From Lepidodermella squamata (taxonomy: Eukaryota > Animalia > Gastrotricha): a DNA stretch of 64,000 nt. Where the stretch lies: the NCBI GenBank assembly GCA_047495785.1, contig JBLDXI010000042.1:1860001-1924000 (forward strand). Direction: 5' to 3'. The notes below the pieces were generated by a model, which made no database searches, had not been told where the DNA came from, and saw nothing but the letters and a program-made list of their open reading frames with translations. The translations under genes and the position numbers were made by a program. Of the stretch, positions 30,420 through 51,312 are shown in pieces (within the stretch, counting starts at the first letter, position 1; every line of letters starts with the position of its first letter).

Positions 30420-31382
30420 AGAGGACACATCGTGGCATCGTTGCGTAATGCCAATATTTAATTAATATGAGGATATTGGCATTACTATTGTTAATCCATC
30501 TCTTTAAGACAAACTTGTATCATTTTTAGGAATGGCTTTACGGGAAATAATAAATAAGGGCTAGTTACGATCAGTTTCTTCATCCAAAATATTTACTATG
30601 TTGACGAAGTTACAGATCTTGGCATAGTCATCAAAGAACTCACACAAAAGAATCGATGAACTTCTTTTTCTTCACACGAGTCAGATGCATTAAACTGCGC
30701 GGCTTGTACATGTCGACCAGCAGGTCGATTTGCATCTGAATCTTTACATCCTCATCCTACCGCAGTCGCTTCATGAGCACACTAAATCCAGTTTTGGCAG
30801 CTTTGCGCTGAGCATGACAAGTTTAGGCGGGTTACGTCACTACCCCTTGAATTCCCCTGCTAGCCATCTTGGAGGGGAACGTGCTTCGCCCGTCCCCGAT
30901 TTTAACTATTCTCTCGAGAATAGCCCCAAGCTATTGAATGATATACGATACATATTTGAAACTTGTTTACATGTCGAGACGGCTGCGCTCAAAATTTGAC
31001 CCTGGCAAAGGGTGTGCTTCCAAATAAGTGCGACCTACGAACATGGGACATTCGCCGTTTGATAGAGCGCCTCGAGTTACCCATTATCCATGAAAATTCG
31101 CCACTGAACATGCTGCTAAATAAGACCCAGAAACGGGAAAGCGAAATTTCGAAATATAGATCGTTTGCTTTTAATCTCAGATTATACCGCGCGGTTTACT
31201 AGCAAAAAACGGTAGCTGATATCGACTAGCGGTTTTCACCCATCCCGGAGTCGAAAATTCATCGCTGTAAATCGCTGTAAATTTCTGCCAATGTATTTTG
31301 CTGTATTTCACTGGAAATGTTATGTTGAGTTACACCCGTTTACAAACGCAATTTTATTGATGCCTTCCACTCATTTACATCG

Positions 31383-33386: not shown

Positions 33387-34808
33387 TTATCGAAAAAAGC
33401 TACCTTGTTTTAAGCGATTTTTACTATTATTTTTCGTTTTAACTTTACTACGGTTAAAGTTGGAGAAATTTAATTTTAAAATATTTTCCCATTTTGCCGC
33501 AAGATTGAATTGATTCACAAAAATACGACTCACCTCATATTGCCGAATCGACTTCGCATCGATGACTGGGGACAGAACCAGATGAACCATAAAGATCAGC
33601 GTCATCAGCGAAACGTGGTGGATGTCGTTTCTTGGCACGATGCCATCAAGAATCAAGGGGAGATAGAGCATGAGGACCAAGTGCTCCATTCCTTTTCCAA
33701 TCGGGGCGTAGTCGGTGCGTTTCACCGATGGCATGCGATGTTTCTTCAAGAACGGCTTGAAAGTTGAGATTTTAGTCATCAACGCTTTGTAAGACAATAA
33801 TTTCGCCTCGGTAATGAGCCATTTGAAGAGCAGTCGCAGTTCCTTGATGCAAATGCCCTGATTAAAATAAAATAAAATACTTATTAAATTTTTTAATTTG
33901 GAAGTAATAAAGATTAATTTTGAAACTAGCATCAAGCATTAAAATTAATTTTTTTATAACTTCTTACCTGAAGGAAAATGTGAAACGCATCGAAAAGGTG
34001 CTGCAGGAAACTGAATTTGCGAACGTTGAAGAGAGCACTGCGAAAATGAAGACAGAACAGGCTTCTCAATTTTTCGCGCTGAACCAAATTTTTAGTCCGC
34101 TCAATTTTTTGCAGTTGGGCCAAAACAATTCCACGCGTGCGGACGAATTTGTCGGCCTTTGAGACACCCTCTAAAATTTAATTAGTCACCAATCAAATTA
34201 ATTCTAATTATCTAAGACAGTACTTAATTATTTGCTTCCCGCTGATCATGCATTGGCTGCATAAAGATTTGATATGAACGGAGAAAGATCCATACAAGCC
34301 CAGAATTTCGTTACAGGCTTTCCCATCGCCGAGAACACCGAGAAATCGAACGCCCACTCGGACTTTGCAGCGTACCGAAGAGCGAGCAGCGGTTTTAGGC
34401 TGTTGACGTTCATTCTTCGAGTAAACTGCGGAGCAGGCCACCCCACCCCGTAAACCCCTCCCGGCGGGAGTGGTTTTCCAACCCCCTCCATCTCATGCGG
34501 TACCAAACTCTCAGCCAAACCATCCTCGACTACCAAAACTCAGGCTGTAAAACCTAGTTCTGCAGGCGGCTGCTTTATTATTGTTGAATTTTATTATGGG
34601 ACGCAATTTTGTGGCGCCATGCCAATGACTCAATTCTTCTGACTGTTTCGAAGCAAGGCGACCAATCACTCCGATCTGTCCGATCCATGAGCAACGCATA
34701 TTTGAAAATAAGAATGTTGATTTTACTCAGCATAGCATCAACGCGCACAGCAGCTGTTCGTCGGTCAAGACAGAGGAATGGTAGGGTAGCGAATCGCATT
34801 GAGATCAT
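33387..34808 (-). pseudogene. Decayed CMC-like (EnSpm/Mirage-type) transposase fragments
   Basis: LGDGKACNEILGLYGSFS..LCSQC and GICIKELRLLF...YLPLILDGIVP..D.H...LVLSPVI resemble the GD-x-N..SFS..CxxC and LPL..VP blocks of animal CMC transposases; fragmented. Confidence 0.55.
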
Positions 34809-34841
34809 GCTGACTTATCCAATCTATGGCGAAGAAAAATA

Positions 34842-36825
34842 CCGTATTTCTCGAAAATATACGACACACCTGTATATATCCCCGCTCCCTAATACAACCC
34901 GACGAAAAAATCGTTTGTTCATATTTAACCCAGGCCTCGAAATTGTACCACAGCTATTTTAATTTGGGCGAAGCATGCGTTGGAACAAAAGAAAAGCCTT
35001 ATTAATGACGCATTATCGTAATCAGTGATTAGCTATCGCGTAAGCAGCTTCGCAACGTCTGATCTTGGCACCATTCATAAGCCAGCAGAAAATGCCCATT
35101 CAGCATTCACTAGCTGAGACACAGAGTTTTATTTTAACATTTTCATATCCTTCTTAATCGTTTTAACCTTCTGGAATCGATGATGGCTGGCTCTCCTGAT
35201 CGTCTTCAAGATTCCGTCCAGGTGTCCGAAGAAGACAAGCGAAAGCGGCACCGCAAGTATTCCCTCGCATACAAAATTCGCGTGGCTGATCATGCAAAAG
35301 CAATCTCAGCAAACGATGCCTCGAGAGTCTTCAAGGTCGATCGTCGATGCGTCAAGGAATGGCTACAGCATCACCAACAGCTGCTGATTCTACAGTTCGC
35401 TGGCATGGAAAAGCGTCATCGTCTCCTTGGCGCCGGTCGACCGCTGGCCTACCCTAACCTCGATCAGGTTATGGAAGAATGGATAACCGAGCAACGCCTC
35501 GCCCGCCGTCCCGTCTCAAGGCGCAGCATTTTGCTGAAAGCAAAACAGCTCGATCCATCATTCAAAGGCAGCAACGGATGGCTCGATCGTTTCCTCAAAC
35601 GGTACGATTTCTGTTTAAGAAGGCGAACTACTCAATGCCAGAAAGTCCCGGAATCGTACATCGATAAGCTGGTCAAGTTTGTTCTCTACATTCGGCAAAT
35701 CCGAATCAACCATCGTTACTTGCCGCAAAACATCGTGGCAGCAGACGAAACAGCTGTATGGATGGACTGGCCATCTGGTACTACGATCGAGCGAACTGGT
35801 AGCAAGGAGGTCTCTGTGATCACTACTGGGCACGACAAGTCACGCATTACGGTAATGCTCACTGCTCGTTCTGACGGCACAAAGCTGAAACCGTTTGTTC
35901 TTCTTAACCGGAAGCGACCGGTAAAAGAGCTGGAACGTTTCAATTCAAAGATGGTCATCGCTTGCAAGGGTAAGTTCTGGAGATCAATGAAAATTTTAAT
36001 CTTTTGAATTTCATCAGGGACTGTTTGGATGAATGACAGCCTCACTGGTCTCTACTTGGACAAAGTGGTCGGGCGAGATGTCTTCGGAAATCGGCGTCTC
36101 ATGGTTTGGGATTCGTTCAGAAGTCACATCAGCGAGGCTACCAAGAAGAAGTGCGCTGGCATGAAGCTCGACCTCGCCATCGTTCCAGGCGGCTGTACGA
36201 AATTTGTCCAACCAGCTGACCTCTGCTGGAACCAGCCTTTCAAAGCTCACATGCGACAACTCTACACGGACTGGCTTTCAAGTCCAGCTGCACAGGACGT
36301 GACCAAAGGCGGCAACCCGAAAGCGCCTCCTCTCCCGCTCATCTGCGAGTGGATTCTGGCTTCTTGGGATGCTCTGCCCACCAGTCTTGTCCGTCGGTCG
36401 TTTTACTTCTGCGGAATCGCCAACGCACTCGATGGTTCCGAGGATGATCAGATCTCGTGCTTCAAGGATGGAAAGCCGTGCGCTGCTGGCCGAGAGCTAC
36501 TGGCTTCGAAGATGGCATCAAACGACACGTTCGATCAAGTCATCAGCCTGGATGATTTCAACGATGACGAAAGTGAACCTGACTTTTTTTTTATTGATAA
36601 TTGATTTTGTTGGTTGATCAAAAAATTGTTAACTTTTTCACTTTTTCACTGAATCGACAAATAAAACAATCTAAAAACGTCGTCTTAATACGAATTGCTC
36701 GCGGCTTTTTGTGATGATTCGCAATTAAACAGCACACCCGTATATATCCCCACTCCCTAATACAACCCGAATCAAAAATCATTTGTTCATAAATATAGCC
36801 CGCGGTAAATTTTCGAGAAATACGG
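34842..36825 (+). mobile_element. pogo-superfamily DNA transposon (DD35D, Passer-type), full length
   Basis: TIR CCGTATTTCTCGAAAAT at both ends, TA target duplication (34840-41, 36826-27), transposase inside. Confidence 0.95.
35180..36604 (+). CDS. pogo transposase (Brinker-like HTH, CENP-B HTH, DDE_1), 2 exons
   Basis: FKGSNGWLDRFLKR; ADET, VWDSFRSH, QPAD with 35 residues between D2 and D3; 48-nt intron 35970-36017 joins the ORFs in frame. Confidence 0.93.
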
Positions 36826-37625
36826 TATTACTGCGGGTGATGTATACAATGAGATACTTGAGAAGTTTTATGCGCCGATGTATAATATTACCGGTATCAT
36901 CATCGCTGGTTATCACTAAGATTAAATGACTATTGGGTAGGAAAAGTGATCAGAGCTTGATGCTTGAGTTAAACAAAAATCTTCTTAAACCGAAAAACAA
37001 GTGTTTCAGCCTCAAAGCAGAATATATGCAGTCAATTGTTTCCGTTCATACATGAGACATGCCGAAATTCTGCTACGGGTTCTTATTCTCGTAGACAACC
37101 GTGACTTTCTCGTTTTGCACTTGGGGCATCGGCACTTCACCCGATCGAGATCGACCTTCAAGTTCAGCGATGTAACTTGATAAGCTGCTTTAAAACGCGT
37201 TCCCTGGAAGTTTTTACAGCTGCGCATCATAGCAAGAAGAGGGATGGTAGAAATTAATTTAGTAGATAAAATTAGCTCAGTCGATGGATCGCCGTCCTGG
37301 TTGCTTCGTATTGGGGATTGCCTACAACAATGAGCTTTATGTAAATGTTTATCAAACCGTCGGAGCTTACCCTTGCTCTGCCATTCGATCTCTAAATGTT
37401 GGTGAATGCCGTAAAAGTATTGAAATAAAAAACTTGTGACAGTTTGACCTGAAAAGGAATTTTGAAAAATGAACAGGATTTATCGGTATATGTTTCTAAT
37501 ATATTATAGCGGTTAGTGCAAGTATATAATCCCGCTGAAAGAAAACAATGCATAAGGCTATGCGTAGGATGCAAAAATGAAACTTCTAAATATAATTTAG
37601 TTTTTCAGTTATTTCAATTCAGTTT

Positions 37626-38867
37626 TCAATCCAAGCTCCACGTTTCAGCAGATGATGATCCCGGATTATCGATGACTGAAGCAGGCACAGAATCAGCAGA
37701 TGATGGTCCCGGATTATCGATGACGGAAGCAGGCACAGAACCCAAAACTGGTGCAAGAGGCGTAATAACTGGTTCGGCAGCAGTTGACGGGCTTTCAACT
37801 TTCTTTACTTCGAATTTTGCGAGCGGTGTGCCCAAAGGCTCTAGTGTGGTGACGTTTATCTTGGTCATGGAAAAGCTGCCTTCACCGTCATCTTTTGATG
37901 GCTTGGCCCAGGCGGTAATGAGCCAACCTTCATGCTGCTCTATCTCGCGTTTGACATGTTTGTACACAGCCCACTCATCAAGAGTCAAGTCCCCGTCGAT
38001 TGACTGCTGTGGCAACAAGCTCCTTCCAAGTTGTGTGGAATGATGCACCGAAAAGCACAGGAGCTCATGTCCTGGGACGATAATCTTGATGCCGAGCAGA
38101 CTACTGATGGATTTCTTCCCCTCAAAAAGCCAGCAATAACAAGATGTTCCGTATCGGCCATCGCACGATAAGGATCGGCAAGATGTTCGGAAGTTCACTT
38201 TTGCAACTCGGATTTTATCAACTTTGACGTTGAATTGCGTAAAGACATCTACTGAAGTGTTTGCAGTGGCGGGCAAGGGCATTTCGACATAACGGAAGGT
38301 CTCAGCAGATTTCCCAATAATGCAGTCGGCTGTGAAAGTCGCCATTTCATTCCAGAGGCCTTCCCATTCAGGGTTTATAATTTCAACAAATCCTCCTAAG
38401 CGCCAGGTACCCCAGAAGGATGCTGATAGCTCACCAGCTTCCGTTTTTGAAAGAAAAACAACGAAGACCTCCGATGAGTTGGGTTTCCTGTATTCATAAA
38501 ATGAACATTAATATATGTGGTGATTGCTATTAAAGACTGTTTTGTACCCGATGAAAAGGCATCTTGAGTAGTAAAACTCGCGTTTCACTCTCTTCTCCTT
38601 CGAACCGTCGCGAGTCATTATTAGCGTTGCAGGCTTCTTCTCCTGTTTCTTTCCGTGCAAAAAGCGCCCGAATATTTTTACTGCGCCTATTTCAGCATTT
38701 CTCTTTGCCATTGAAGCCACGTCAACGATTTCAAACTCCTGCACCATTTCTGACACCTCCCGATACTTTCGGGCTTTCAATTTGCTGGCAATTGGACTGA
38801 GTCTGGAAAAGGAACAAATATTAAACAACATGGTATCTTTTGTGACTTGTTACCCTTCGTTCGGCAT
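37626..38867 (-). CDS. Putative OB-fold/zinc ssDNA-binding accessory gene of the Helitron-like element (3 exons)
   Basis: Exons 38867-38854, 38802-38548, 38487-37626 splice in frame; SFWGTWRLGGFVEIINP and SCRSLSCDG..SCYC cluster; duplicated 14-aa tail repeat. The OB-fold call is inference. Confidence 0.55.
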
Positions 38868-41800
38868 TCTTCAGAGGTTCAAGGTAATACAGAAAAGCGT
38901 CTAATACAATGGAAAGGAGTGAACCAGAGCATTCAACATATGAGACGTGTCATACAGAAAAGCCCCTCATCGTGTTGTTGCGTCAAACAATTGGGATGAC
39001 TACCCTCTAATAAATAATGTGGTACAGCAATTTCCCTGTGTCAAGTTTTCAGTACTTATTCAGCTGCAATAAAGGCCTTTTCTCCACGGCACATCTCAAA
39101 CGGGATACTGTTCTGGGCCAACCCGAGCGGCGACTCAGCCGACACCCATGACACCTACATGCGACTTAAGCCGGTGTAACGACGCCGACCTGTTTCCACC
39201 TCTGGCTCAAGGTTCAATCCCCCGATATTTATTACTGCATAGGAATCAGTCTTCGCGAAGTAGGATCCCGGAGCTGAGGTGTTTTCTACTTGTTTTCTAG
39301 GTCTGATAGGAATGGTGATTTTTATTCATCGATTGAAGGTGCCATGTACGAAAGATGTAAAAAGATGGAGCTGCCCAATCTGGAAATAAGAAGTTTCCAC
39401 CATAACCGTGCGGGATGAGTTATGACAGAAAAAAGGATGTGTTGATGCCAAAAATAAGGCAGTCAAAGTCATTAGTCGCGAGAAGGTGAAAATGTGTCCA
39501 AAACGAAACAGCTTCCTGGGAACAATCATGAACTCAATTAGATAACGATTGAAAGATGTAAAATGTCGTAATCGATGCAATGACTGGCTGTGATGAAAAT
39601 CAGTTGATGTCTTCAAATGAGCGAACTCCATTATTCTTTGAAGCCCACAGTTTCTCGGGTGGAACGGTTTCTAATTTTGTCTTCGTTGAATCTTGCGAAC
39701 TTCACAATTCGGAGAGCAAGCGTGCGGTTAGCTGCAAGATTCGATTCAGCAACTGCAACATTCATAATACTTTGCACTTCCCAAGGATAGAGAGGTCCCT
39801 GAATTGCTTTGTGGATGCGACGCTCAAAAGCCTTGCCGTCATCGTGGCAGGAGAAGCCAACAATCAAAGTGGCAACCATCCAGTTGTTATGCTTTCGCGT
39901 AAACACAGAACCGTTGCCATGGTTGTGCTCACTCAAACGTACATCAACCTTGCGTTTCGTTTCGCCGACATACGAAATTGCCGGTTTTCCTTGGGGGAAA
40001 ATGTGGTACACGAAACCGTTGCTTACTTGGCTGGGTAGCGCTTCATTGATGAAGAACGATGGGCCATCAACTTCAACTTCGAAGCTGTGAGAAAGATTGC
40101 GAGCCATCTGTTGAACCCGTTTTAGACTAGCTTCGTACCACCTGCTTGTTTTCAGAAGAACGGCATCGAGGTTTACTTTCAAGGTTTCGACGTCAGACGT
40201 GACAAATGTGACAAGATCTAGGGACGGGCATCTAGATAGGATAACCATCACTTGATCCCTCTGCCATAACTTGAAAGACGTGTCGCTACCTGAGATCTGA
40301 ACGGCGACGCCTGTTTCAGCGGTGGCTCCGAGCACGCGATGCGCTGTGCCACAAATGTTGTACCGCAAGGGGAATTGTATTCTACGAGCATGAGCGCCCT
40401 CTTTTCCCACAACGATTGGAATTCCGGCACGTCGAGCTATATCGATTGATGGCCACCCGCTTCGGTCCGCATTGATGCAGCGCTGTCCAGGCGGAACTAA
40501 AACAACCTTTAGCTTTGCATTAACAGCTGACATGTCATCAGGTAATCTGGTGATCATGCAAAGCTGACCTTGAGAGAACAGTTCGCTGTTGTACGTCATT
40601 CCCATCATTGCACCTTCGAACAAGACGAGTGTTCTAGGTTCCAGACAAAATCGATCGAGCTGTGAAACCATTCTTTTTTCTTTGAGTTGAACCCAAGAAT
40701 CCAAAGCCTGACTTTTAACTTCATCAATACAAGCTGCCCTCTGCGTCTTTATTGCAGGATCATTTTCCTTCCCGGAGAGATACTTAGAAACAACCTGGCG
40801 CTCGGCGCTGCGTTTACCAACAATGCGGAGTTTACCATCGGGAACTTCACTCCATTCCTTGACAAAGTGACATCGCTCTTCAACAGCTTGCAATATGAAT
40901 TGCCTATCCTCAAAATTGAGATGAGGCTTGCGGAAGACTTCGAGTATGCGCTGTAGCTGTGGGTCACCCGCTGCACGTACGTATGCGTTGAGTAGAATGA
41001 CGTCAAATGAGAATAAAACACTGGTTGAGAGCCAAAATGGACTGCCACCTATCGGATCGAGTTGGGCAGGGTCGCCAGTCGCTATCACCAGTTTCCCGCC
41101 CATTTTCAAGTCATTCGACATCAATTTTTGAGAGTGGCATCAAGTGTCGCGAATGTCTGGGCCGATATCAGGCCAATTTCTTCGAATACGATTACATCAG
41201 TACGCATGAGGACCGCTTGGCTAACTGGATTGTGTTCAAGCTTCTGCAAACAAACTCTAGCATTGGCGAGAGGATGCGCATCCTTGACTGGTAGATTGAA
41301 CAGCAAATGCATATGAGTTCCTCCAAGGGTTCTCGCACGTTCAGCAGTGAGAGCCGTTAGACAAACTTTGAGACCTCTCCCGATACCATAAAGTGCTGCA
41401 ATCAAAGCTAGATGCGTCTTACCAGAGCCCGGCGGGCCAACAAGAAGCAAGTGACGATAGTTGTCACGATCGGCGAAAATATTTCTGAGAGAAGAGACGA
41501 CTCTGTTGAGAGCGGTTGTTTGTTCCGCCACGGATTCGTCACTCTGACTGGCGGCAGGTCGGATTGTAGGGACCCAATGAAGAGGATTATCAGGCGTAGC
41601 TTCCATTAAAGAATCCAAAAGGGGGAGATCAACCTTTCCCTGAAGTTGAGCATAGCATGGTTGAACAAGATTTGTCTTTATTTGAAGTTCCGCCTTGTTA
41701 ATTGCTTCATTCGCTTCCCGCTTCAATGCAGCGTCGCAAACAGCAGGCGACCTGTGCTCAAGGTGTCCGCCTTGAAAGAAAAACCTGTGGAAAGCATTCA

Positions 41801-44800
41801 CTGCGGCGACGATGTAGTAGCTCAACTTTTTTGAAGAAACGGGTAGCCAAATGAGCTGGGTCTGAATTACTGCTCTAACAAGATTAGCAACTTCGAGGGG
41901 TGATGTTCCTTCAAGGTCATCGAATTTGACCAATCGAGCGTTGTGAAAGGTTACCCGCATGTCCGGAGACTTTATGATACTGTGCTCACAATCGAAACGC
42001 CCCATCGTCAAAACGACATGATACAAAAAGTTGAATTGATGAAGAGGCGTTATGTTGGGGAAGACGGGGATAGAAAGTCTTTTACCAGAGCGATGGAGAA
42101 AAATTGAATTTATTGCTTCATTCTTTCCATCAGCAAGCATTCGAAATAGTTGAAGCATTGGGGCCTTCGCGGGGTTGCTATCGTCCTTGGACATCAAAAT
42201 TTCGATACCCAACTGCACACTACAGTCTCTAATACGCACAGGACGTTTCATTCCATTGAAAAGAGGCGCGGAGTACAAGTCTGCCGACACTCGAAGCTTC
42301 TTGTTAAATGGATAGGGCACAAATATTCTGCTGTAGTCTCCCAATCGATCAAAAATGCGAGCTTCTGATGGGCAGATATTAAATTGCTCTGGTTTTCCCG
42401 TTGTCATATTGGATGACTCGTAATCTCGAATGTGATCAATTTGCTCATCGGTAAATTTTCGCCACTCTTCTAACTCCTCCCGGCCTTCATTAGGATCAAA
42501 ACCACCGGAAGTACCTGGCTGCAAACGTCCACGCCGGTTCACTATCCGGAAGCCACGCCTCAACTCCGGAGGGTGGGTGTCGATATGAACATGTAACACG
42601 TTTGTGTAAGTGTAGTCAAATCCTAAATTCACCCATATCACCTCTGTAGTCGCAACTTCCAGGGCATGGGTTTCTTTTTCTGCTCGCTTCTTACTTTCGT
42701 AAATAGCAGCGCCCGTCACTTTCTCGTTTTGCGTACGATGCACTTCGGTTATGACTTCCTTACCCAGTCCTGTTGATTTAAATGTGGATCGCGAACGACC
42801 CTCAACTTCCGCGTTGTACTTAACGAGATAAGCTGCTTGAAAACGTTTATCCGTTTTCTGGTAATTTGTGCAGCTGCGCATCATGACAGCAAGGACGGGG
42901 ATGGTAGGGATAAATTTTGTGTGCGCCTCATTGTTTCTCAGCGGATAATGCCAGCTTCCAGCTTTCATATTTTCGTCAAGCAGCTCCCACTTGCTACCAG
43001 CGAAAACGTCCGGAACGCGTCTAGCTAAGTTTAACTGCTCCAAGACGGCATAGGCCTCCTCGCTGTATATGCCACTGATTTCTTCGAAATAAGCTCGTTC
43101 AGTCGCTGGATGGCCACGAACCCGGCAAATAGGTTCACCTTCCTCATTTGTTCGTTTCAGGCACCTTTCACCTGCATTGAGACAGTCATGCCTTTTTAGT
43201 GGCGGCATCAATGCATGCAAATAGTCGAGGTCTTCACGGTCATCAGCTAAACCGTCAGCCAGCATATATCTGTCATCAGTGAAAAATTTCTCGCTGAAAA
43301 ATGTCGCAGGGTCTAGGCAAATTCTGTCAAGCATTTGCTCGTCAGTTTCATTTTCGATACTGATTCCTCCGTGTAGATGGGGCTTGTTTCCAAGTGAACC
43401 CGTTCCTGTAAAAAGTAATTAAAGAGGATGTAACCTATATTTTTCGACCATGTTACCTTGAAATTCCATTCTTGTGAAAAGGGTTTTCACCTTTCCCAAT
43501 ATATTCATCGGATTCTCCTCGATAAACTGACGAAGATAATGCAGAGTTCGTTCCCAAACACGTAACATTATGGTCAAGTTCCCTTCATACAGGTCCTTGA
43601 ACTTTGCCACATCGTAGTCGAACCGGAGAACATCAGTGAGCCTCATGTTGTAGTCTTCTAGCTTGATTGGCGAAGATGGAAGATTGAAGGCAATCAATAC
43701 GCATAGCCTTGACGATTTGCGCCAATCCGGGTGATCCTGTAAGAATTTTTCCTAATTCATGCAATAATTATAAATTATAAATCAAAATCTCACCGTAGTC
43801 GTTGGCAGTAACAGTAAAAAAGCCTGACCAGGGATTCTCGCTGATTGAGGCTGCAAGCTCCTTTACCTTTCGAGGAGAATCTATTTCATCGAACTGAAGG
43901 ATAGAGCCGTCAATTTCCACGCCATGCAACGCCCCGTCACAGATGCTCTCAAAGCCACGCTGATACATTAGGCCGCTGCTATTATGGTTGAGGTTTATAT
44001 TGACATTAATATCAAACAGCCAATGAGCAGAATCGAAGCGGCGAGAAGTCGCCAAATCACCATCTCGCATCCTGACAAGATTATGAGCTTTCAAACTCGC
44101 AACACCCGGTATATGTTTTGTTGCTGCGTAAAGATGGTAAGGAAGTGCTCCGAGGACGGCTCCTGAACGCGTCGCATAAAAAACAGATGGGATAAGGTTC
44201 GCCTCGGGTGAAAGTAAAGAAGTCGGCGGCGATTTGCCACAGTTCATGAGGCGTTCAAGCATAAAGGGTATCTGGTTACTCTGGTATTGAGCTATGCTTC
44301 GACGCAGCAGCTTCAAATGAGATGATATGATAAATTTGCTCGGTATATCCATATTGGGATTATGAATTGGGGCGGTGTCTGTTATGGAGAGATTATGATG
44401 CCGCGATCCTCATCAAAAATAACATCGCCAGTATAAGACATGCCGGTAAAATCGAGTTCCTCAGTCTGAGACGACTCGTTGTCACTAGCCTCTCCTTCGC
44501 TTGTTTCCTCTGGCTCAACATGAGTTGGAATCTGAGGAGCTCTCCTGATAGGCATACGTTCCGGAATCGGTACTGCTGTTGTTTTCCCGACATCGAGCGC
44601 CTTGTAGCAGCCGGCGCATATGCCAACGTCACAGTCAAACTTCCCACATATCAAGCCAGCGCTACATCTTAGAAATGACCGCTTTCCACATTGCATAGGA
44701 GGATTGCTTCGGGTCTTATAGACGCAGCATCGAACTGCATGATCGAGGGGAACAACCATGAGACCCCTATTAGGATCACCGTGTGCCTCGCAATGAGCGT

Positions 44801-47142
44801 GCTTTCGCGCTCCCAATGAGGACTGAACAACTTGGTTCATAAACTCTTCATCTCTTGGCCGTGAATAGATAGCATACATAACATTTCCAAGCACAACCTC
44901 CGATGGTCGCAGTTTCAAATAATAGGCACATCTTCCATTCTTCAGCTTCCACCAGCCACTGAAGTCATTACTCCACCGCATGACCGTCTCCACATGATTT
45001 TCCACTTTTAACGCAACGTAAACAAGATGACAACCAGCGACAGTCATGGGTAAGTCGGAGAACTGAATTTCGGAGGACGCTTCTGTTGTGTGACATATTA
45101 TGACGTCTGCACTTGAATCATGACTATCTAAACTACAGCCGTCGTTCGTAATAGCTCTCTTAGTATTCTCAGCTCCGCTTCTCGACGAGCGTCGCTCTGA
45201 GCAGTGAATGAGGTCTGCTCGGATCTCGAGAAGTTCACTTCCTGTGGAAAAAAGTTCTGTGTCTTTAATCATGGGTGCCAATTTATTTAAAATTGATGCT
45301 AATTTGTTCACAGGTGAAGTCTTTTCGCTGATGTCGAAGAGAGTTTGAATCAACTTGCGGTTAGCTTTAATAGGTAATTTCTGCTCGCTGGACCTCGTAA
45401 TGGATTCTAGGATTCGACGTAATTCGACAATGGAATTGGACTCAGTAGCAAGACTAGAAACAGTCATCCTGAACAACGAACGGCAATTCAATAATACGCT
45501 ACACAGTTGCGCGCTGATGTCTTCAGGTCGTTGAATAGATACAAGATACGGAGTCATTCCGAATTGGTCATTTCGATGAAATGGCGTAAGCATGAGACCC
45601 TGCAGCGATGTGAACTCCCTAGGCTCATCGGTGGCGGTGCTACCATCTGCTGAACCTACGCGCTCCTTGTTCTTGAGGGCCCAGCAAAAGTAAGTGTCCT
45701 CATTTTCAATGAAGTTTCCTCCTTGTTCACAAGATTTGATCATCTGCTCGATTTGTCCACGTTCCACCTGAAATTTCGACATTATGTGTGCTGTGTTATC
45801 AACCCCGATTTTCGCTGCGCAGGAAATCGCCACGTCAGGACGCTCATTAACTGCTAATAATTGAGAGGATAATCTATCGGCATTTTCATCCAGGTGAACA
45901 TTGGTTGTACCGGAGAGGGAGCAAGTACTGGAACCAAAATATCCTACGAATGCCTGGGATACAGGCCCTGAGCTCGTGAAATTCCCCACACGACCACCGC
46001 GAATAAAGTACGGCTGAATGTGTAGAGGCGCAGCAAAATCCGGCATTTTACTGTCAGCTGGTTTGAAACAGGGGTTTACAGCGGGATGAAGTAAACGCTG
46101 CATCATAGCTTTGGGTGAGTGATCCTCGCAAACCATGACGCAAAGGCCCAAGTTGGGATCGATCACCATTGAAGGGGAAACAGCCCATTTCCATTGAAAA
46201 TTGGGTTGGCAAGGCCAATCAGGTCTGGCGGAGTTGAACAGGCGAGAGTCCGAATTGAAAATTGCCTTTCCAATGATGAAGTGCAACAAATGATGGAACT
46301 GTATTCTTTTGCTGTAGCCTTGGTCGGGGAAAGTCCAACACCCTTGGCTACATTTCACTGTAGGAAAGGGCATCTTGTTTAGTGCTTGCCTGAAACCACC
46401 TGTGCGGACATAAATAAGGGTTTATAATATTATTACGAAGCAAATCTGATGTTACCTGGTGAACGAAGGACATTTGACTCGAATGCCCTAATCTCCACCG
46501 TTCTATCTTCAAAAATGGTTCCCAACCGTCAGGAGAGCTGCTGATAACTTCATTCCACATTTGCATCATTACGGGTGAGATGCAATGTTTCAACTCCTCA
46601 CGGAATCGCTCGTATCGCTTTGTGAAAAATATCGTTACTACCAGTGAAGGCCAAGCAGATTGAAAACTGAACTTATCTCGCACTGTCAGGAAATCATAGC
46701 AGCACTTGCAGATAGTTATTTCATTGTAACTCTTGCACTGCAATGCGCCCCAGCCTCTTCTCCCCTTTATTTCGTGGTGAATTGCAAGATTGATGTCGAA
46801 GTTGGGAATAGATTTTCGAAGGCAGTTTCGACAGTGCAGATTGGAAAGTTTTGCTGAGAACGATGCAATATTCAAAGATGTCGTTTTCCTCATTTTTCGG
46901 CGCTTTCGTGGGCTGCTGATCGATTCGCAAACACCAATACAACTTTCATAACTGGGCGGTGCTCCTTGTTCAGCCCGAATGAGATTTTCGCTGCCAGGTG
47001 GTTGTTCTTCTGTAGTAAAATCGGAAACGACGTTCGCAGACAAATTCTGCCCCGGAACTGCTTGAACTTCATTGTTGCAGTCCAAGATTGATGTGCTCTT
47101 GGACATGGCAGGGTTTTGGACGAATGGGATTTCGGTTTCAAC

Positions 47143-47555
47143 CAGGGTTGCACTTGTATAAACAGACTGTTTAAACACACGTGTTTAAACACATGTTTAA
47201 ACAGTATAAAGTCCAAGGAGTTTATACATATGTATAAAGTCACTACCAATTAATGCTATGATTTCCATAAAATCAGGCTTTCGGTGCCTTAGCTTCGAAG
47301 AATTTCTGGCTTTTCACGCAAAAACAATTTTTTTTCGCCTCATTTCGGTCAAGTTTGACCAAGTCTGATGTTTCTATACTGCGAAATGATGCTTTTTGAT
47401 AGAAATGACATGATTTATGGCTTGATTCCTTAGTATTCTTGACTAAAATCGATGTTTTCGCCCAGAGCTGTATTAAGTCCTGTTTAAACATGTTTAAACG
47501 TTTAAACGTTTAAACATGTAGAAAGTAGAGGCGATCTGTATTTAGTGCAACCCTG
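47143..47555. mobile_element. Non-autonomous hAT-type MITE, 413 bp
   Basis: TIR CAGGGTTGCACT / AGTGCAACCCTG; perfect 8-bp TSD GTTTCAAC (47135-47142, 47556-47563); subterminal GTTTAAAC arrays. Confidence 0.92.
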
Positions 47556-47558
47556 GTT

Positions 47559-48581
47559 TCAACGGAAGATTGGCAGTCGTTTGACGACAAGTTGCTCTGA
47601 TTGGCACTCTCGACTCTTTGAAGATCCAAAGTTGATGGTGGCATCAAACGAGTTGTCACGAGTAACCAAGACGTAATAGTGCTCCTCCGAGTGATTATGA
47701 ACCAGGCGAATGACACGTTCGCCTCTTCCGAACACGTGTATTTCTCCTCGATTACCAGTAGAGAAAAGCACGATTCTAACGTCGCAAGCATTTCCCATTG
47801 CCCAAATTGATAGCTCATTACCCCATTCACCTCCTTCTTTAGCCGGAATGCCAACGCGGCTCCTGAACTCTTTAGCCGTCAAAGAAGGAATTGGCTGGTT
47901 TCTAACAAATGCCTGCTCAACTTCGACAGCAGTTGGCTCCATGAAAATGTATTTTGTTCCAAATTTAGGCCGTCTCAGTTCTTGTTGAATCTTCCTTCTC
48001 ATTTCAAGGGAATTTCTGATTGACATATCACCAATGCTTTGCAGTCCTTTTACGCCAGCCAAAAATTGACATTCGCCGCCTCCGGCTACGCTGACGAGTA
48101 TGAAGTTGTTCAACTTGGCCAATTCCTTCGACCACTCCATATTCGACTCGATTTCAGAGGGTGGCATAGTGTAAACCTTGAACCTATCAGTGTCCTCCTC
48201 CATAGGGACCCCAATATCACCTAAAAATAGAAAATAGCATTTCGAACGTAATAATGCGAAGGGAAGCTGACTTGAATCGTTATCTTCCACTTCCGAGCTG
48301 GTTGAAAAATCGGCATCTTGAATTTCTATCATATCTCTCGAATCAAAAGTTGTTGCTCTGCTAGACTTATAGTGAGTTGGCTGCGAGGAAGCACAAGGGC
48401 AGTAATGCTGATTATGCTCATCGCAATGGCTTTGCCTTGTAACTCCTTTTTTACCGCAATCTTTCTTGCTGCAGTGCATAGTGCGTTTTTTCGGGGTTTT
48501 CCCACAACTGTTCTGCGGCTTCATGAATAGCTGATTTTGGTGATGAAGTTCAGTGAAAGAGTAATAGTTAATCAACCGCAA
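47559..48581 (-). CDS. OTU-family cysteine protease domain with upstream Cys/His-rich segment
   Basis: VAGGGECQFLAG (catalytic Cys), WGNELSIWAM..C.VRIVLF, EEHYYVL (catalytic His). Confidence 0.8.
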   Translation of the reverse strand: MRLINYYSFTELHHQNQLFMKPQNSCGKTPKKRTMHCSKKDCGKKGVTRQSHCDEHNQHYCPCASSQPTHYKSSRATTFDSRDMIEIQDADFSTSSEVEDNDSSQLPFALLRSKCYFLFLGDIGVPMEEDTDRFKVYTMPPSEIESNMEWSKELAKLNNFILVSVAGGGECQFLAGVKGLQSIGDMSIRNSLEMRRKIQQELRRPKFGTKYIFMEPTAVEVEQAFVRNQPIPSLTAKEFRSRVGIPAKEGGEWGNELSIWAMGNACDVRIVLFSTGNRGEIHVFGRGERVIRLVHNHSEEHYYVLVTRDNSFDATINFGSSKSRECQSEQLVVKRLPIFR

Positions 48582-50616
48582 ATTTCATACTAACGACATA
48601 AATAAAAAATTCCTATTTTAATTTGTTAACGCGAACACTTAACACACTTTTATTCACAAATTGTGCTGAAAAAATGTAATACACCACTGACAAGAACGAC
48701 GAACAATTTCTCCGACAAAATGGAATCAAAAGATAATGAGTAAAATATAGCTGCTTTTTTGCTCAAAAATATTCACATCTATGAATGGTCATTTTTCAGC
48801 TTACGTTCAGCCTTCGTTACTGTCATCTTCCGAAATGACAAACTCACTATTTTTCGGGAACTCGCTTTCGTATTTTCTATTGATTGAAGCATAGGAATAA
48901 GAGCGAAGCTGCAAAAACCTGTTAGGTAATTTAAGACATTTATTCATAAATATGAACCACAAAAACCCAGCGTGCCTTTTCATCCGCCTGATTCTTGAAC
49001 TTCTAAATCCTGCAGCAATCAAAACATGCGAATCTCCCAAAACCGAGCGGAGCAAGCTGAGAACACGAGCAACTGCTGTTTGAACATTTTCGTGTGGACT
49101 TGTTTCAATAAGAAACATGATATTATTTTGCCAAACACCGCAAGAACGGACGTGATTAAGGGAAGCACGGACGTCCCGTAGAAAGCTCACGGGCCGCTCT
49201 AAAACTCGGTTGTCCTTGGTTACTTTGACATCGCAAAGATCAGATCTACTTAGCGTAATATTATCAGGCAGCCAGCAGCCACGGCAGTTTACCGACGTCG
49301 AAACGTATGAATGGTAGCGATTGCATTTGAGAAACGATCGCTCCCAATTCCGAGTTATTAGCCATTGATATCGCTAATAAATGCTGCATGAGAAATGCGC
49401 ACACCTAACGGGATCTAATTCGAATTGATGAAAAGTTGGGACATAGACAATCGATTTGATCCCGGTACATTCTTAAATCGATTTGTGATAAATACGATAA
49501 TTACAACAGAAAATATCGATAATTTTGAAAAATTAAAATCGCGAGACGGAAATAATCTCTCGAGGAACTAGTTAACAGAAAGGCTATCAAAGTTCACCGC
49601 ACTCTATTCTGGACAGGAAAGGGCAATGTCATGAAAGCCTTTTCAAAACCACCGGCCGTTGCCAGTTGGCGGCAAATTTCCATCATTTTCCAAGAAATCA
49701 GTATTCAATCGTCCAGTAGTTCATAGTCTGGTTGGTATAGTGCTAAACAGAATAAGCGTTTTTAACGTCGCTAATATATAAGTAAAATTGGAATACCTCT
49801 TTCATCCACGATGCCCAGAAGAATCATTCCGAATGACATATTTCTGACATCATCTGCTATATTGCCCGTGATGATTTGTGCTAAGCGTTGAAACATAGCA
49901 CTCGGGGCAAGGTTAGCTAAAAAGGTAGCCACAATTTTGTTTTGCTGTCCGGAACGTAGCTCAAAATCATATATTCCATCTTCGTCCTTAAGAGAATTGA
50001 TGACTTCTTGGCTTGCGCAAATGCGAAGCTCGTACACATACATTGCCACCGGTCCACTCATGAGGTACAAAAATAGCCGGTAAAATGAGAACAAATGGAA
50101 TCTAAAAACTGCTGAAAATAGACGACTTGTCCCTTGTCCCATTATCTATTGCGTTTCATTGTTGTGTTATCAAATTTCCGCTTTATAGCTGCTACTTAAG
50201 TTTAGCTGAACATATATTACAACGCGTGTGCCATTTAATTAGTATTTAGGGTAAATAAAGTGTTTATAGGAACAGGTTCCATTACGCCAGCCATTCCCAA
50301 ACCGTGTCCCATGTCAAAATCGCGGATCTTTTTTAATAAAAAAAACACGGATTATCGACTATTGATGATCGATTTTAGTTCGACACTGATTTTTTTTCAG
50401 ATTGCCTATCAGATTCGCCACAATTTAAACTGTTACCTCAACAACTTATAACCTTATTTGTAAGCGTGAAAGAGTGAACAATCAAAAATTATAATAAATA
50501 TTCGTGAGATAGTTTAGGCTGCAATTATGGATGCAATTAGAAGTCGACCCTCTTTCAGAAAATACAGTTATCTCGAGGTCGAATGTTTAGTTCGGCACGC
50601 CTTTGCTGCGGAAAGT

Positions 50617-51177
50617 TCATTCTGAAAACAGAAAAACCGTTATTATTTTGAAAATCGAGCGGTTGATTTCGCGCACCTTGAGGTATCGATGGCGAGTACC
50701 CACAGAAAATGCTGGTGCAGCATCGATGAGTAGACTCATAGCCTCAAGCACAGAAATCGAAGCGGCGCCCAACACAGTAGCATTGTTCACGACGGTGCCG
50801 TCGGGACTAGCAGCTTGAGAAGAGCGGCGCGACGAAGTAGTGGAGCTAGCGAGGCTAGAGCGACGAGAGCCTGATCTAGAAATCGACGCCAGCGCCAGTC
50901 TCGCGACAACCTCGTCAAGGTTGGTTTCTAGTAAATTTGCAACCATTTTGAAATGCGGCGGTTCATTGGCACTGAGACGGAACGCCCTCGCTACCGCGGC
51001 GTCTTTGTTAGCCGTGAGCCAATCTTTGCTGTCAAAGTATTTAAACAGTAACGGAAAGTTGGCAGCTGTATAGGTGAAGCGATATTCGGCTATCGCCGCT
51101 TCTTGCAGTTCGGTTATTGAGGCCGCCTCCAGCTCGACGAGCCGAGTGTCGGTCTCGTAAGAGAGCTAGGCCTCCAT
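50617..51177 (-). pseudogene. ORF with PB1-like N-terminus interrupted by one in-frame TAG
   Basis: MEA*LSYETDTRLVELEAASITELQEAAIAEY...LLFKYFDSKDWLT reads in frame into ORF 50617-50946. Confidence 0.4.
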
Positions 51178-51312
51178 TATTTAAAAATTTCTCTAAAAAC
51201 AAACATGGAAACGATTTATTAAATGGAGGAAGACAATAGGAGATCATTTGTAGCGGTAAAAAAACTGGAGTTTGAGAACACCGTGAGATTTGAACGATGA
51301 GAACCATTTCGC

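What the first reader, a model, noticed from the sequence alone, without database searches (positions are those of the whole stretch)
37626..48581. Large divergent Helitron-like module: OTU + HUH Rep + PIF1 helicase + GIY-YIG nuclease, with a separate SSB-like gene
Seen: six collinear minus-strand ORFs (plus OTU) rejoin, via short introns, single-base frameshifts and removal of one MITE, into a roughly 2,700-aa polyprotein. It carries the three rolling-circle Rep motifs (FFTVTAN; EFQG|TGSLGNKPHLH split by an intron; YLVKY), an SF1B helicase with an atypical FEE Walker B, and an in-frame C-terminal SLX1-like GIY-YIG domain. Known: Helitrons encode Rep-PIF1; Helentrons typically add an AP-endonuclease and sometimes OTU; some carry RPA-like genes. 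Inference: this is a separate lineage using GIY-YIG where Helentrons use APE, with about 1,100 aa of unassigned Cys-rich N-terminal sequence and its own ssDNA-binding protein. I cannot confirm it is undescribed.
Basis: partly seen in the sequence, partly recalled or inferred. Interest (0 to 1): 0.9.

Follow-up and report, generated by a model that had tools for sequence, protein, structure and literature searches.

The report
Helitron-like transposon with GIY-YIG nuclease
This is a decayed copy of a large rolling-circle (Helitron-type) transposon whose giant transposase also carries a GIY-YIG nuclease; the family is widespread in animals and marine metagenomes, and I found almost no description of it in the literature I could search.

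Summary
The sequence observation holds. On the minus strand, 48584-39634, seven collinear ORFs match single 2,467-2,814-aa proteins of other organisms in the order OTU, Cys-rich N-terminus, Rep, Pif1-like helicase, GIY-YIG.

- **Rep.** A confident model of a same-genome paralogue's Rep matches the Helraiser Helitron transposase alone (Z 14.5). The family profile aligns FxTxTCN, EFQ..PHxH and YLxKY with Helraiser's motifs.
- **Nuclease.** The GIY-YIG is SLX1-like and sits at the C-terminus in 47 of 55 full-length relatives, so it looks ancestral to the clade.
- **Distribution.** The family has 1,290 representative clusters, including proteins of Styela, Myxine and Cyprideis. This genome holds about a dozen diverged loci and 15,005-bp head-to-tail arrays.
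- **State of this copy.** It is broken by frameshifts near 43680 and 41130, both also present in independent contigs, and by a MITE. It has two real introns.

Not supported: nothing shows that the neighbouring gene binds ssDNA. Not done: a tree with HLE1 and HLE2 references, and the termini.

The only precedent found is one moss HLE2 family reported with a "captured" GIY-YIG. The scan's first readers noted the same kind of element three times elsewhere in this genome.

Verdict: a new variant of a known kind.

The parts
34355..50613 (-). Repeat-scale unit that holds the whole module. It is about 14.3 kb without the nested TE and is shared, with sharp ends, with an internally deleted copy at C20:3186387-3189077.
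   Evidence: blastn at 97-98% identity. The C20 copy joins window 50613-49550 to 37936-36826 and then to 34841-34355. Flanks are unrelated on both sides. It is not proven that these ends are the transposon termini.
47562..48584 (-). OTU-like cysteine-protease ORF (341 aa; homology region about 47667-48113).
   Evidence: It is 32-34% identical to paralogue ORFs, one of which hits Pfam OTU at 8.1e-5. It aligns to the N-terminal OTU regions of P0008, P0012, P0013 and P0160. It has no Pfam hit of its own.
47141..47557 (.). MITE inserted between the OTU ORF and the next coding block (TIR ACCAGGGTTGCACT, TSD about TTGAAA).
   Evidence: Many genomic copies at 80-99% identity. TIR and flanks read.
46351..47184 (-). 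Cys-rich N-terminal coding block 1.
   Evidence: Collinear matches to P0160 182-255, P0013 283-447 and P0012 446-607.
44385..46421 (-). Cys-rich N-terminal coding block 2 (679 aa), with no known domain.
   Evidence: Matches P0160 308-629 and P0012 635-1292. No Pfam family and no Atlas hit. It runs on into the Rep exon if the 2 nt at 44394 are absent, as in run X1's contig.
43794..44409 (-). Rep exon with motif 1 (FFTVTAN).
   Evidence: F and T of the consensus motif YFxTxTCN are nearly invariant in 113 sequences.
43737..43793 (-). Intron 1 (57 nt, GTGAG...TTACAG).
   Evidence: Sequence. After splicing the reading continues GSPGLAQIVKAM, which fits the family consensus. Paralogue C7 is interrupted at the same point, while C29 and C64a are continuous there.
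43457..43736 (-). Rep exon ending in EFQ. It carries a 1-nt frameshift at about 43690-43668.
   Evidence: The frame changes between GSPGLAQIVKAMRIDCLQSS and SSPIKLEDYN...MEFQ, judged against paralogues. The X1 contig shows no gap here.
43406..43456 (-). Intron 2 (51 nt, GTAAC...TTTTTACAG), which splits EFQ|G-TGSLGNKPHLH.
   Evidence: It is in frame, and paralogues read EFQSQGSLGNKCHVH without interruption.
41124..43405 (-). Exon holding, in order: the HUH motif (HLH), a Cys/His insert, the two-tyrosine motif YLVKY, a linker, and helicase domain 1A (GPPGSGKT, FEEIG).
   Evidence: H290/H292 and Y475/Y479 are nearly invariant. They align with Helraiser residues 592-595 and 698-746.
41125..41139 (-). 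1-nt frameshift between helicase motifs II and III.
   Evidence: Three paralogues read LDAVMKYVMGNDLKFGGK straight through. The X1 contig agrees with the window.
39634..41139 (-). Helicase C-terminal half plus an SLX1-like GIY-YIG nuclease (domain at about 39808-40017).
   Evidence: Pfam GIY-YIG 8.8e-8, 32.8 bits. Family profile against SLX1 structures E 6e-14. The residues VYHI...SYVGET...RLSEHN...FER are present.
37629..38507 (-). It has a conserved C-x4-C-DGRYG-x2-C-x-C knuckle. Its fold is unknown.
   Evidence: About 13 paralogous matches in the genome. Alignment A5. dN/dS 0.06-0.15. No match in Pfam, PDB, the Atlas or the protein database.
37015..37479 (-). Degenerate fragment of a related Rep (region of the Tyr motif), downstream of the accessory gene.
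   Evidence: Translation. The C20 counterpart of this fragment is 68% identical to window Rep residues 166-245.
34842..36825 (.). Nested, unrelated young TE. It is not part of the module.
   Evidence: It is absent from the C20 copy. Many 99-100% identical full and deleted copies occur across the genome.

Best explanation
The region is an inactivated copy of an autonomous rolling-circle transposon. It belongs to a distinct, widespread clade of Helitron-like elements.

**The protein.** The intact form encodes one giant protein of about 2,500-2,800 aa. In order it has an OTU protease (only in this subclade), a long Cys-rich N-terminus, a Helraiser-type HUH endonuclease with two catalytic tyrosines, a Pif1-family 5'-3' helicase, and a C-terminal SLX1-type GIY-YIG nuclease.

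**Inferred mechanism, by analogy with Helraiser.** Rep nicks one strand at the element's end and becomes covalently linked through a tyrosine. The helicase peels the strand off. The strand is circularised or transferred to a target. Read-through gives head-to-tail arrays.

**Role of the GIY-YIG (inference, untested).** It probably supplies a nick in duplex target or donor DNA, which is the role proposed for the AP-endonuclease of Helentrons.

**This copy.** It cannot make the protein. At least two frameshifts and a MITE interrupt it.
For: **Fold.** The AlphaFold model of the Rep region of same-genome paralogue C29 (113-sequence alignment, pLDDT 84.6, pTM 0.87) has one significant Foldseek hit, Helraiser 7lcc (E 2.8e-5). 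VIA-align gives Z 14.5, rmsd 4.1 over 331 residues (chain 367-792). Other HUH Reps score Z 5-5.7.

**Sequence.**
- The family Rep profile hits only Helraiser in the PDB (E 1.2e-5) and aligns motif 1, HUH and the YxxxY motif.
- Pfam Helitron_like_N is found in 11 of 19 full-length relatives, and at 36.8 bits (above the cut-off) in L049.
- PIF1 is found in 19 of 19 and GIY-YIG in 15 of 19.
- The family profile matches Pif1 structures at 5e-28, the Helraiser helicase at 6e-21 and SLX1 at 6e-14.

**Architecture.**
- The window's pieces are collinear with single ORFs of other organisms.
- L049 carries Rep and Hel-GIY without introns.
- GIY-YIG is present in 49 of 55 long relatives and is spread over the whole tree.

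**Transposon behaviour.**
- About a dozen diverged loci in this genome.
- Internally deleted derivatives that keep both ends: C20 against the window, and C60 against C64b.
- A sharp shared 3' end with a subterminal hairpin in the C60/C64b pair.
- Arrays with a 15,005-bp period that hold the whole gene.
- dN far below a saturated dS between paralogues.

**Decay.**
Against: - The window copy itself gets no Pfam Helitron_like_N or OTU hit.
- The structure was predicted for a paralogue that is 46-48% identical over the Rep region, not for the window's split Rep.
- Termini, target site and absence of target-site duplication are not established. I found no terminal inverted repeat or strong hairpin at the ends inferred for this copy. 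The 3' limit shared with C20 abuts a tRNA-like half, so it may not be a true end (my reading; one search finds a tRNA cluster just beyond).
- Tandem arrays can also arise by ordinary duplication.
- No RNA data and no evidence of recent movement: this sublineage has only one full and one deleted copy.
- The role of the GIY-YIG rests on analogy alone.
Confidence: 0.85

Rival explanations
1. It is an ordinary member of the described HLE2 group (Helitron2/Helentron). One sublineage replaced or acquired an endonuclease by gene capture, as reported for HelenSM92 of Sphagnum. On this reading nothing beyond a known subgroup is present.
For: - HELIANO found a GIY-YIG in an HLE2 family and lists OTU among the accessory domains of Helitron-like elements and Ssb-like_OB as almost exclusive to HLE2, with RPA upstream of RepHel (PMC11417382).
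- In this genome the accessory gene also lies upstream of the transposase in most paralogues.
- OTU is present.
Against: - DUF6570, which HELIANO proposes as the HLE2 marker, is absent from 19 of 19 relatives and from the window and C29 pieces.
- No AP-endonuclease domain appears anywhere.
- Helitron_like_N scores are marginal (16-37 bits), while this genome's canonical elements score up to 211 bits at 41 other loci.
- The GIY-YIG is nearly universal across a family of 1,290 clusters, not sporadic.
- No tree was built, so this rival is weakened but not excluded.
Confidence: 0.25
2. It is part of an integrated or episomal virus-like replicon that uses a RepHel protein, not a transposon.
For: - Relatives sit on stand-alone metagenomic contigs of 16-24 kb with several unannotated ORFs.
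- Three Tara Oceans contigs of about 20 kb are 99.8% identical.
Against: - No capsid, polymerase or packaging domains appear on those contigs.
- Apart from one weak match between an ORF downstream of the transposase in L051 and one in L052 (E 5e-12), only the RepHel-GIY protein is shared between them.
- The three Tara contigs are one collinear locus and are not circular.
- In this genome the copies are dispersed, decayed, tandem or internally deleted, as transposons are.
Confidence: 0.05
3. It is a family of host (domesticated) repair or replication genes combining a helicase with an SLX1-like nuclease, rather than a mobile element.
For: - Strong purifying selection between paralogues.
- Spliceosomal introns in the window copy.
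- RefSeq models such as Styela clava LOC120334012.
Against: - Many copies carry stops, frameshifts, truncations and nested TEs.
- Deletion derivatives keep the ends.
- The Rep active-site residues are conserved.
- Several diverged sublineages coexist in one genome.
Confidence: 0.03

Closest known systems
Helentrons / HLE2 (Helitron-like elements with Rep-Hel plus a C-terminal AP-endonuclease, often OTU and RPA-like genes)
   Same: The layout is Zn-rich N-terminus, HUH Rep, Pif1-like helicase, then an extra nuclease at the C-terminus. An OTU protease sits upstream, and a small accessory gene lies upstream in most paralogues. The elements are large (about 14-15 kb) and form head-to-tail arrays.
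   Different: The nuclease is an SLX1-type GIY-YIG, not an Exo_endo_phos AP-endonuclease. DUF6570, which HELIANO proposes as the HLE2 marker, is absent. Helitron_like_N scores are marginal. Short terminal inverted repeats and T-T insertion have not been shown. The transposase is far larger (2,200-2,800 aa).
Helraiser / canonical Helitron (HLE1), PDB 7lcc
   Same: The Rep fold is shared, including part of the region before the HUH core (Z 14.5). FxTxTCN, EFQ..PHxH and YLxKY align with Helraiser's own copies of these motifs. A Pif1-family helicase follows Rep.
   Different: About 14% identity in the Rep region. There is a Cys/His insert between the HUH and Tyr motifs. The helicase is no closer to Helraiser's (E 6e-21) than to bacterial or eukaryotic Pif1 (5e-28). 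No 5'-TC or CTRR-3' ends were seen. The C-terminal nuclease and the N-terminal OTU are additions.
HelenSM92 of Sphagnum magellanicum (HELIANO, PMC11417382)
   Same: It is the only published Helitron-like family I found that is reported to carry a GIY-YIG domain besides RepHel.
   Different: It was described as a capture in a single moss HLE2 family with TT target sites and short terminal inverted repeats. The family studied here occurs in animals and marine metagenomes, and its GIY-YIG is nearly universal.
SLX1 structure-specific endonuclease and the GIY-YIG endonuclease of Penelope-like retroelements
   Same: The GIY-YIG catalytic core is shared, and SLX1 structures are the best PDB matches. 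Like Penelope elements, this is a mobile element that has recruited a GIY-YIG nuclease.
   Different: Here the domain is fused to a RepHel DNA transposase, not to SLX1's C-terminal zinc-finger domain (RING/PHD-type, my recollection) or to a reverse transcriptase. I did not test its relation to the Penelope nuclease.

Membership tests
Helitron-like elements (RepHel rolling-circle transposons) | HUH motif and a two-tyrosine (YxxxY) motif in a Rep nuclease domain | tested here: met
   The window reads KPHLH and YLVKY. H290/H292 and Y475/Y479 are at least 90% conserved in 113 sequences. They align with Helraiser PHAH (592-595) and VKYLFKY (within 698-746).
Helitron-like elements (RepHel rolling-circle transposons) | Rep domain with the fold of a Helitron transposase | tested here: met
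   The model of paralogue C29 (pLDDT 84.6) has Helraiser 7lcc as its only significant Foldseek hit (E 2.8e-5). VIA gives Z 14.5 over 331 aa. This was tested on a paralogue 46-48% identical over the Rep region, not on the window's split Rep.
Helitron-like elements (RepHel rolling-circle transposons) | Pif1-family SF1B helicase C-terminal to Rep in the same protein | tested here: met
   Pfam PIF1 scores 25.1 bits in the window piece (just under the 25.9 cut-off), 6e-12 in C29, and hits 19 of 19 relatives. The family profile matches Pif1 structures at E 5e-28.
Helitron-like elements (RepHel rolling-circle transposons) | Pfam Helitron_like_N (PF14214) above the gathering score | tested here: inconclusive
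   The window has no hit. C29 scores 16 bits (E 0.015). L049 scores 36.8 bits against a cut-off of 28.9. Eleven of 19 relatives hit at E<1e-3. A whole-genome scan with PF14214 found 41 loci, none of them in this family.
Helitron-like elements (RepHel rolling-circle transposons) | Defined termini (TC...hairpin-CTRR, or short TIRs plus a hairpin), no target-site duplication, AT or TT target | tested here: inconclusive
   The window and C20 copies share sharp ends (5' TTCCGCAGCAAAGG..., 3' ...AAAGTCCGAGTG), but I found no TIR or hairpin. The C60/C64b pair shares a sharp 3' end...CATGTCCTAGCATGGTTTTTTTACTGGAT, with a subterminal GC hairpin. There are too few young copies, and no empty site was found.
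HLE2 / Helentron | C-terminal apurinic-apyrimidinic endonuclease (Exo_endo_phos) | tested here: not met
   No such Pfam hit in the window pieces, C29, L049 or 19 relatives. A GIY-YIG occupies that position.
HLE2 / Helentron | DUF6570 domain upstream of Rep (the HLE2 marker HELIANO proposes) | tested here: not met
   No DUF6570 hit at E<=1 in the window pieces, C29 or L049. None at E<=1e-3 in 19 relatives.
HLE2 / Helentron | Placement inside the HLE2 clade in a Rep+Hel phylogeny | not testable with these tools
   No HLE1 or HLE2 reference sequences could be obtained.
GIY-YIG nucleases, SLX1-like | GIY-YIG catalytic domain with the conserved Tyr, Tyr, Arg, His/Asn and Glu | tested here: met
   Pfam PF01541 scores 32.8 bits against 22.6 in the window ORF. 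The family profile matches SLX1 chains 4xlg and 7cq2 at E 6e-14 to 6e-13. The residues VYHI, SYVGET, RLSEHN and FER were read.
OTU cysteine proteases | OTU domain with catalytic Cys and His | tested here: inconclusive
   The window ORF has no Pfam hit. Paralogue C29 scores 23.6 bits against 23.3. P0012 hits at 7e-9. The window reads GGGECQF and a later HYY by eye. Catalytic competence is not shown.
RPA/SSB-type OB-fold ssDNA-binding proteins (for the neighbouring gene) | Recognisable OB fold or RPA/SSB family match | tested here: inconclusive
   No Pfam family at E<=1. No PDB hit for the four-sequence profile at E<=10. No Atlas hit. No homologue in the protein database.

The most novel reading that the evidence does not exclude
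This is a further major clade of eukaryotic Helitron-like transposons, beside HLE1, HLE2 and the Paramecium clade. It would be defined by a giant transposase with an ancestral C-terminal SLX1-type GIY-YIG nuclease. It is widespread in animals and marine plankton and has been missed because standard Helitron profiles barely detect it. The nuclease would give it an integration step that canonical Helitrons lack.
Probability: 0.45. Interest if true: 0.75.

Novelty: new variant of a known kind. Interest (0 to 1): 0.6.

Why it matters
Helitron-like elements are currently sorted into two clades, HLE1 and HLE2, with a Paramecium clade added in 2026 (PMC11417382, PMC13085455). The family here has these properties:
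- at least 1,290 clusters at 50% identity;
- members in a tunicate, a hagfish, an ostracod and many marine metagenomes;
- a nuclease different from any described for the group, kept at the same position across the family;
- it falls below or near the thresholds of the Pfam Helitron model, so it may be under-annotated or mis-annotated in genome annotations.

Public names for its members include 'GIY-YIG superfamily endonuclease', 'ATP-dependent DNA helicase' and 'uncharacterized protein'.

It would be a second, independent case of a rolling-circle transposase recruiting a duplex-DNA nuclease, which bears on how these elements integrate. It also offers intact single-ORF members for biochemistry.

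Tried and rejected
1. **Word-seeded protein search with the window's 765-aa Rep-Hel ORF.** No hit. The later exhaustive profile search found the family.
2. **First AlphaFold run with 12 paralogue pieces.** It failed (pLDDT 41.5) and was replaced by a 113-sequence alignment.
3. **The accessory gene as SSB or RPA.** Pfam, a PDB profile search, the Atlas and a database search were all blank. It is absent from L049, L051, L052 and the tandem unit. I reject the label as unsupported, not as disproved.
4. **The C20 copy as an empty site for an 11.6-kb insertion.** Rejected, because the junction cuts through the conserved part of the accessory gene. It is a deletion derivative.
5. **Terminal inverted repeats or hairpins at the inferred ends, and a terminus between the GIY-YIG stop and the accessory gene.** None found.
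6. **Three Tara Oceans contigs as independent insertions to define termini.** They are one collinear locus.
7. **An intron at the 41130 junction.** Only a frameshift fits.
8. **MITE removal as sufficient to fuse OTU in frame.** It is not.
9. **Reference HLE1 and HLE2 sequences for a tree.** Not obtainable.
10. **Taxon names for most relatives.** Not on record.
11. **RNA evidence.** No RNA run holds the stretch.

Full report
**Setting.** The window is G000:C42:1860001-1924000 of a 121-Mb eukaryotic assembly. Its introns are short and have GT-AG ends.

**1. What is in the sequence**

| Window coordinates | Content |
|---|---|
| 48584-47562 | OTU-like ORF |
| 47184-46351 | Cys-rich N-terminal block 1 |
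| 46421-44385 | Cys-rich N-terminal block 2 |
| 44409-43771 | Rep motif 1, FFTVTAN |
| 43751-43422 | ends in EFQ |
| 43418-41124 | HLH, YLVKY, GPPGSGKT, FEEIG |
| 41139-39634 | rest of the helicase, then GIY-YIG |

tblastn with three full-length relatives shows that all pieces are collinear with single proteins, from OTU to GIY-YIG. The relatives are P0160 (2,467 aa), P0013 (2,532 aa) and P0012 (2,814 aa).

The interruptions are as follows.
- **Two introns with good splice signals.** One is 43793-43737 (57 nt, GTGAG...TTACAG). The other is 43456-43406 (51 nt, GTAAC...TTTTTACAG). The second restores EFQ-GTGSLGNKPHLH. Paralogue C7 is interrupted at the same point as the first, apparently by an intron, while C29 and C64a are uninterrupted there.
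- **A 1-nt frameshift at 41125-41139.** Three paralogues read LDAVMKYVMGNDLKFGGK without a break at this point.
- **A frameshift inside exon 43736-43457, at about 43690-43668.** Only there does the reading pass from GSPGLAQIVKAM..., which fits the family, to ...LRVWERT...MEFQ.
- **A frame change at about 44394.**
- **A 417-bp MITE at 47141-47557**, with TIRs and many genomic copies.

Contigs of public run X1 cover 39600-45500. They show no gap at the first two frameshifts but lack 2 nt at 44394. With that natural variant, 46421-43771 is one 883-aa ORF. That break is therefore an assembly error or a polymorphism. The other two are supported by the second data set.

Removing the MITE leaves a TGA and a different frame, so OTU is not rejoined by that step alone.

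**2. Domains**

*GIY-YIG.* The domain passes Pfam's threshold in the window itself.

*Other window pieces.* The window's helicase piece is just below the PIF1 threshold. Its Rep and OTU pieces get no Pfam hit.

*Paralogues and relatives.*
- C29 is the best-preserved paralogue. It gives OTU at 8.1e-5, Helitron_like_N at E 0.015, PIF1 at 6e-12 and GIY-YIG at 3e-7.
- Metagenomic contig L049 carries a 1,562-aa Rep protein directly followed by a 767-aa Pif1+GIY-YIG protein, without introns. Its Rep region scores 36.8 bits on Helitron_like_N, above the cut-off.

*Size of the family.* A profile of the Rep region was searched against 1.84 billion representative proteins. It found 1,290 proteins at E<=1e-3 and 309 at E<=1e-30, many of them 2,200-2,800 aa long.

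*Domain content of 19 full-length relatives*:

| Pfam family | Relatives with a hit |
|---|---|
| PIF1 | 19 |
| GIY-YIG | 15 |
| Helitron_like_N | 11 |
| OTU | 1 |
| DUF6570 | 0 |
| AP-endonuclease | 0 |

*Family profile against PDB sequences*:

| Target | E-value |
|---|---|
| Pif1 helicases | 5e-28 |
| Helraiser helicase | 6e-21 |
| SLX1 nucleases | 6e-14 |

*Rep structure.* With a 113-sequence alignment, the Rep region of paralogue C29 folds confidently (pLDDT 84.6, pTM 0.87).
- Its only significant Foldseek match in the PDB is the Helraiser transposase.
- VIA-align gives Z 14.5 over 331 residues (rmsd 4.1, Helraiser 367-792).
- AAV, parvovirus, geminivirus and nanovirus Rep nucleases follow at Z 4.5-5.7.

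*Rep motifs.* The Rep profile detects Helraiser as the only real PDB hit by sequence. It aligns FlTlTCN with FITMTCN, EfQ..G.lPHvH with EFQKRGLPHAH, and rYlaKY with VKYLFKY. From my memory of the Helraiser work, the last two hold its catalytic histidines and tyrosines; I did not check this against the papers here. The two His and two Tyr are at least 90% conserved in the family, as is a Cys/His insert between them.

*Walker B.* The 'atypical' FEE form is the family norm.

**3. A transposon family, not a single oddity**

*Copies in this genome.* The genome holds about a dozen loci at roughly 35-48% protein identity to the window copy. OTU is found at six other loci.

*Selection.* Between paralogues dN is 0.16-0.58 and dS is saturated. 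The lineages therefore diverged under purifying selection.

*Phylogeny.* In a Rep tree (FastTree, 111 rows) the own-genome copies form one group next to Styela clava. The GIY-YIG occurs in both halves of the tree. OTU occurs only in the subclade that contains the window. Of 55 listed relatives of at least 2,200 aa, 49 have the GIY-YIG, and in 47 it lies in the last 250 residues.

*Hosts.* Named hosts are Cyprideis torosa, Myxine glutinosa and Styela clava. The rest are metagenome or Logan contigs, some from Tara Oceans.

*Signs of mobility.*
- **C20 copy.** C20:3186387-3189077 is an internally deleted copy, 97-98% identical. It joins window 50613-49550 to 37936-36826 and 34841-34355, with unrelated flanks. 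This sets a unit of about 14.3 kb. It also shows that 34842-36825 is a later insertion of another TE.
- **C60 against C64b.** C60 is a deleted derivative of C64b. The two share a sharp 3' end 414 nt after the GIY-YIG stop, with a subterminal GC hairpin.
- **Tandem arrays.** A related sublineage forms head-to-tail arrays with a period of 15,005 bp and about 97% identity. Each unit holds the whole gene.

**4. What is not established**

*Termini and target.* I found no inverted repeat or hairpin at the ends of the window unit. Its 3' limit in C20 abuts what looks like half a tRNA-Gln gene (my reading; ARAGORN did not call it), beside a cluster of three tRNA genes. It may therefore be a rearrangement or a transduced flank rather than a true end.

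*The 'SSB-like' gene.*
- It is a real gene. It has a conserved Cys knuckle and dN/dS of 0.06-0.15. It is linked to several loci.
- It lies 4-12 kb upstream in the four other full loci, directly before a 5'-truncated Rep at C4, and downstream only in the window.
- It is absent from the tandem unit and from relatives elsewhere.
- No search gives it an OB fold.

*Phylogeny with references.* I could not obtain HLE1 or HLE2 sequences, so no such tree was built. The case for a separate clade is indirect:
- marginal Helitron_like_N scores, against up to 211 bits at 41 canonical loci of the same genome, none of which belongs to this family;
- no DUF6570;
- a helicase no closer to Helraiser than to cellular Pif1.

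**5. Literature**

Full-text searches for Helitron or Helentron together with GIY-YIG or SLX1 gave one relevant case. HELIANO reports an HLE2 family of Sphagnum, HelenSM92, with a 'captured' GIY-YIG. It also lists OTU and RPA in both HLE groups, and Ssb-like_OB and DUF6570 as almost exclusive to HLE2 (PMC11417382).

A 2026 paper states that only HLE1 and HLE2 were known, and adds a Paramecium clade (PMC13085455).

Repbase could not be consulted.

First readers of this scan noted the same kind of element three times elsewhere in this genome.

**6. Verdict**

This is a decayed copy of a Helitron-like element from a widespread clade that carries a GIY-YIG nuclease. I rate it a new variant of a known kind.

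The proposed role of the nuclease, nicking duplex target or donor DNA, is an inference from its position and from the analogy with Helentron AP-endonucleases.

Noticed in passing
window 34842-36825: A young 1,984-bp TE is nested in the unit. It carries a 275-aa ORF at 35180-36007. The genome holds dozens of 99-100% identical full-length and internally deleted copies, so the family looks recently active.
   Followed up: partly
G000:C42:1249981-1340157 and C20:3102045-3172523 (loci L037, L046): Head-to-tail arrays of a related RepHel-GIY element. The period is 15,005 bp and neighbouring units are about 97% identical. C42 has at least six units and C20 at least three. Each unit holds the whole gene plus about 6 kb of other sequence.
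   Followed up: partly
window 30786-30897 (minus strand): A fragment about 90% similar to the subterminal 3' region of the C60/C64b sublineage. It includes the GC hairpin TCCCCTCC...GGAGGGGA and the same terminal CTGGAT. It is a solo 3' end, or the end of another copy, 3.5 kb beyond the unit.
   Followed up: partly
L039 9000-9650 (C20:3189000-3189650): The deleted C20 copy ends inside what looks like the 5' half of a tRNA-Gln(TTG) gene on the other strand. Beside it is a cluster of tRNA-Glu, tRNA-Leu and tRNA-Asn genes. A degenerate version of the anticodon arm lies inside the window unit's 3' end. This could be a 3' transduction or an insertion into a tRNA gene.
   Followed up: partly
window 47141-47557: A MITE family with TIR ACCAGGGTTGCACT and internal GTTTAAAC repeats. 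Many copies across the genome are 80-99% identical.
   Followed up: partly
window 50609-52000: Directly beyond the unit's 5' end lies another repeat, 99-100% identical to C6:237508-239730. It overlaps the stretch that another first-reader note calls RAG1/Transib-like.
   Followed up: no
window 37645-37740: A 48-bp tandem duplication (2 copies, 95% identical) lies in the C-terminal tail of the accessory gene. It produces the repeated SVPASVIDNPG peptide.
   Followed up: no
G000, 41 loci (e.g. C35:58086-58622, C15:2399564-2400121): The genome also holds canonical Helitron-like elements scoring up to 211 bits on PF14214. None is at a locus of the GIY-YIG family, so several Helitron-type lineages coexist here.
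   Followed up: no
L052, L053, L054 (Tara Oceans and other marine metagenome contigs): Three contigs of about 20 kb from different marine samples are 99.8-99.9% identical. They carry a 3,073-aa member of the family with the same unannotated neighbouring ORFs. They represent one locus of a widespread planktonic eukaryote.
   Followed up: partly
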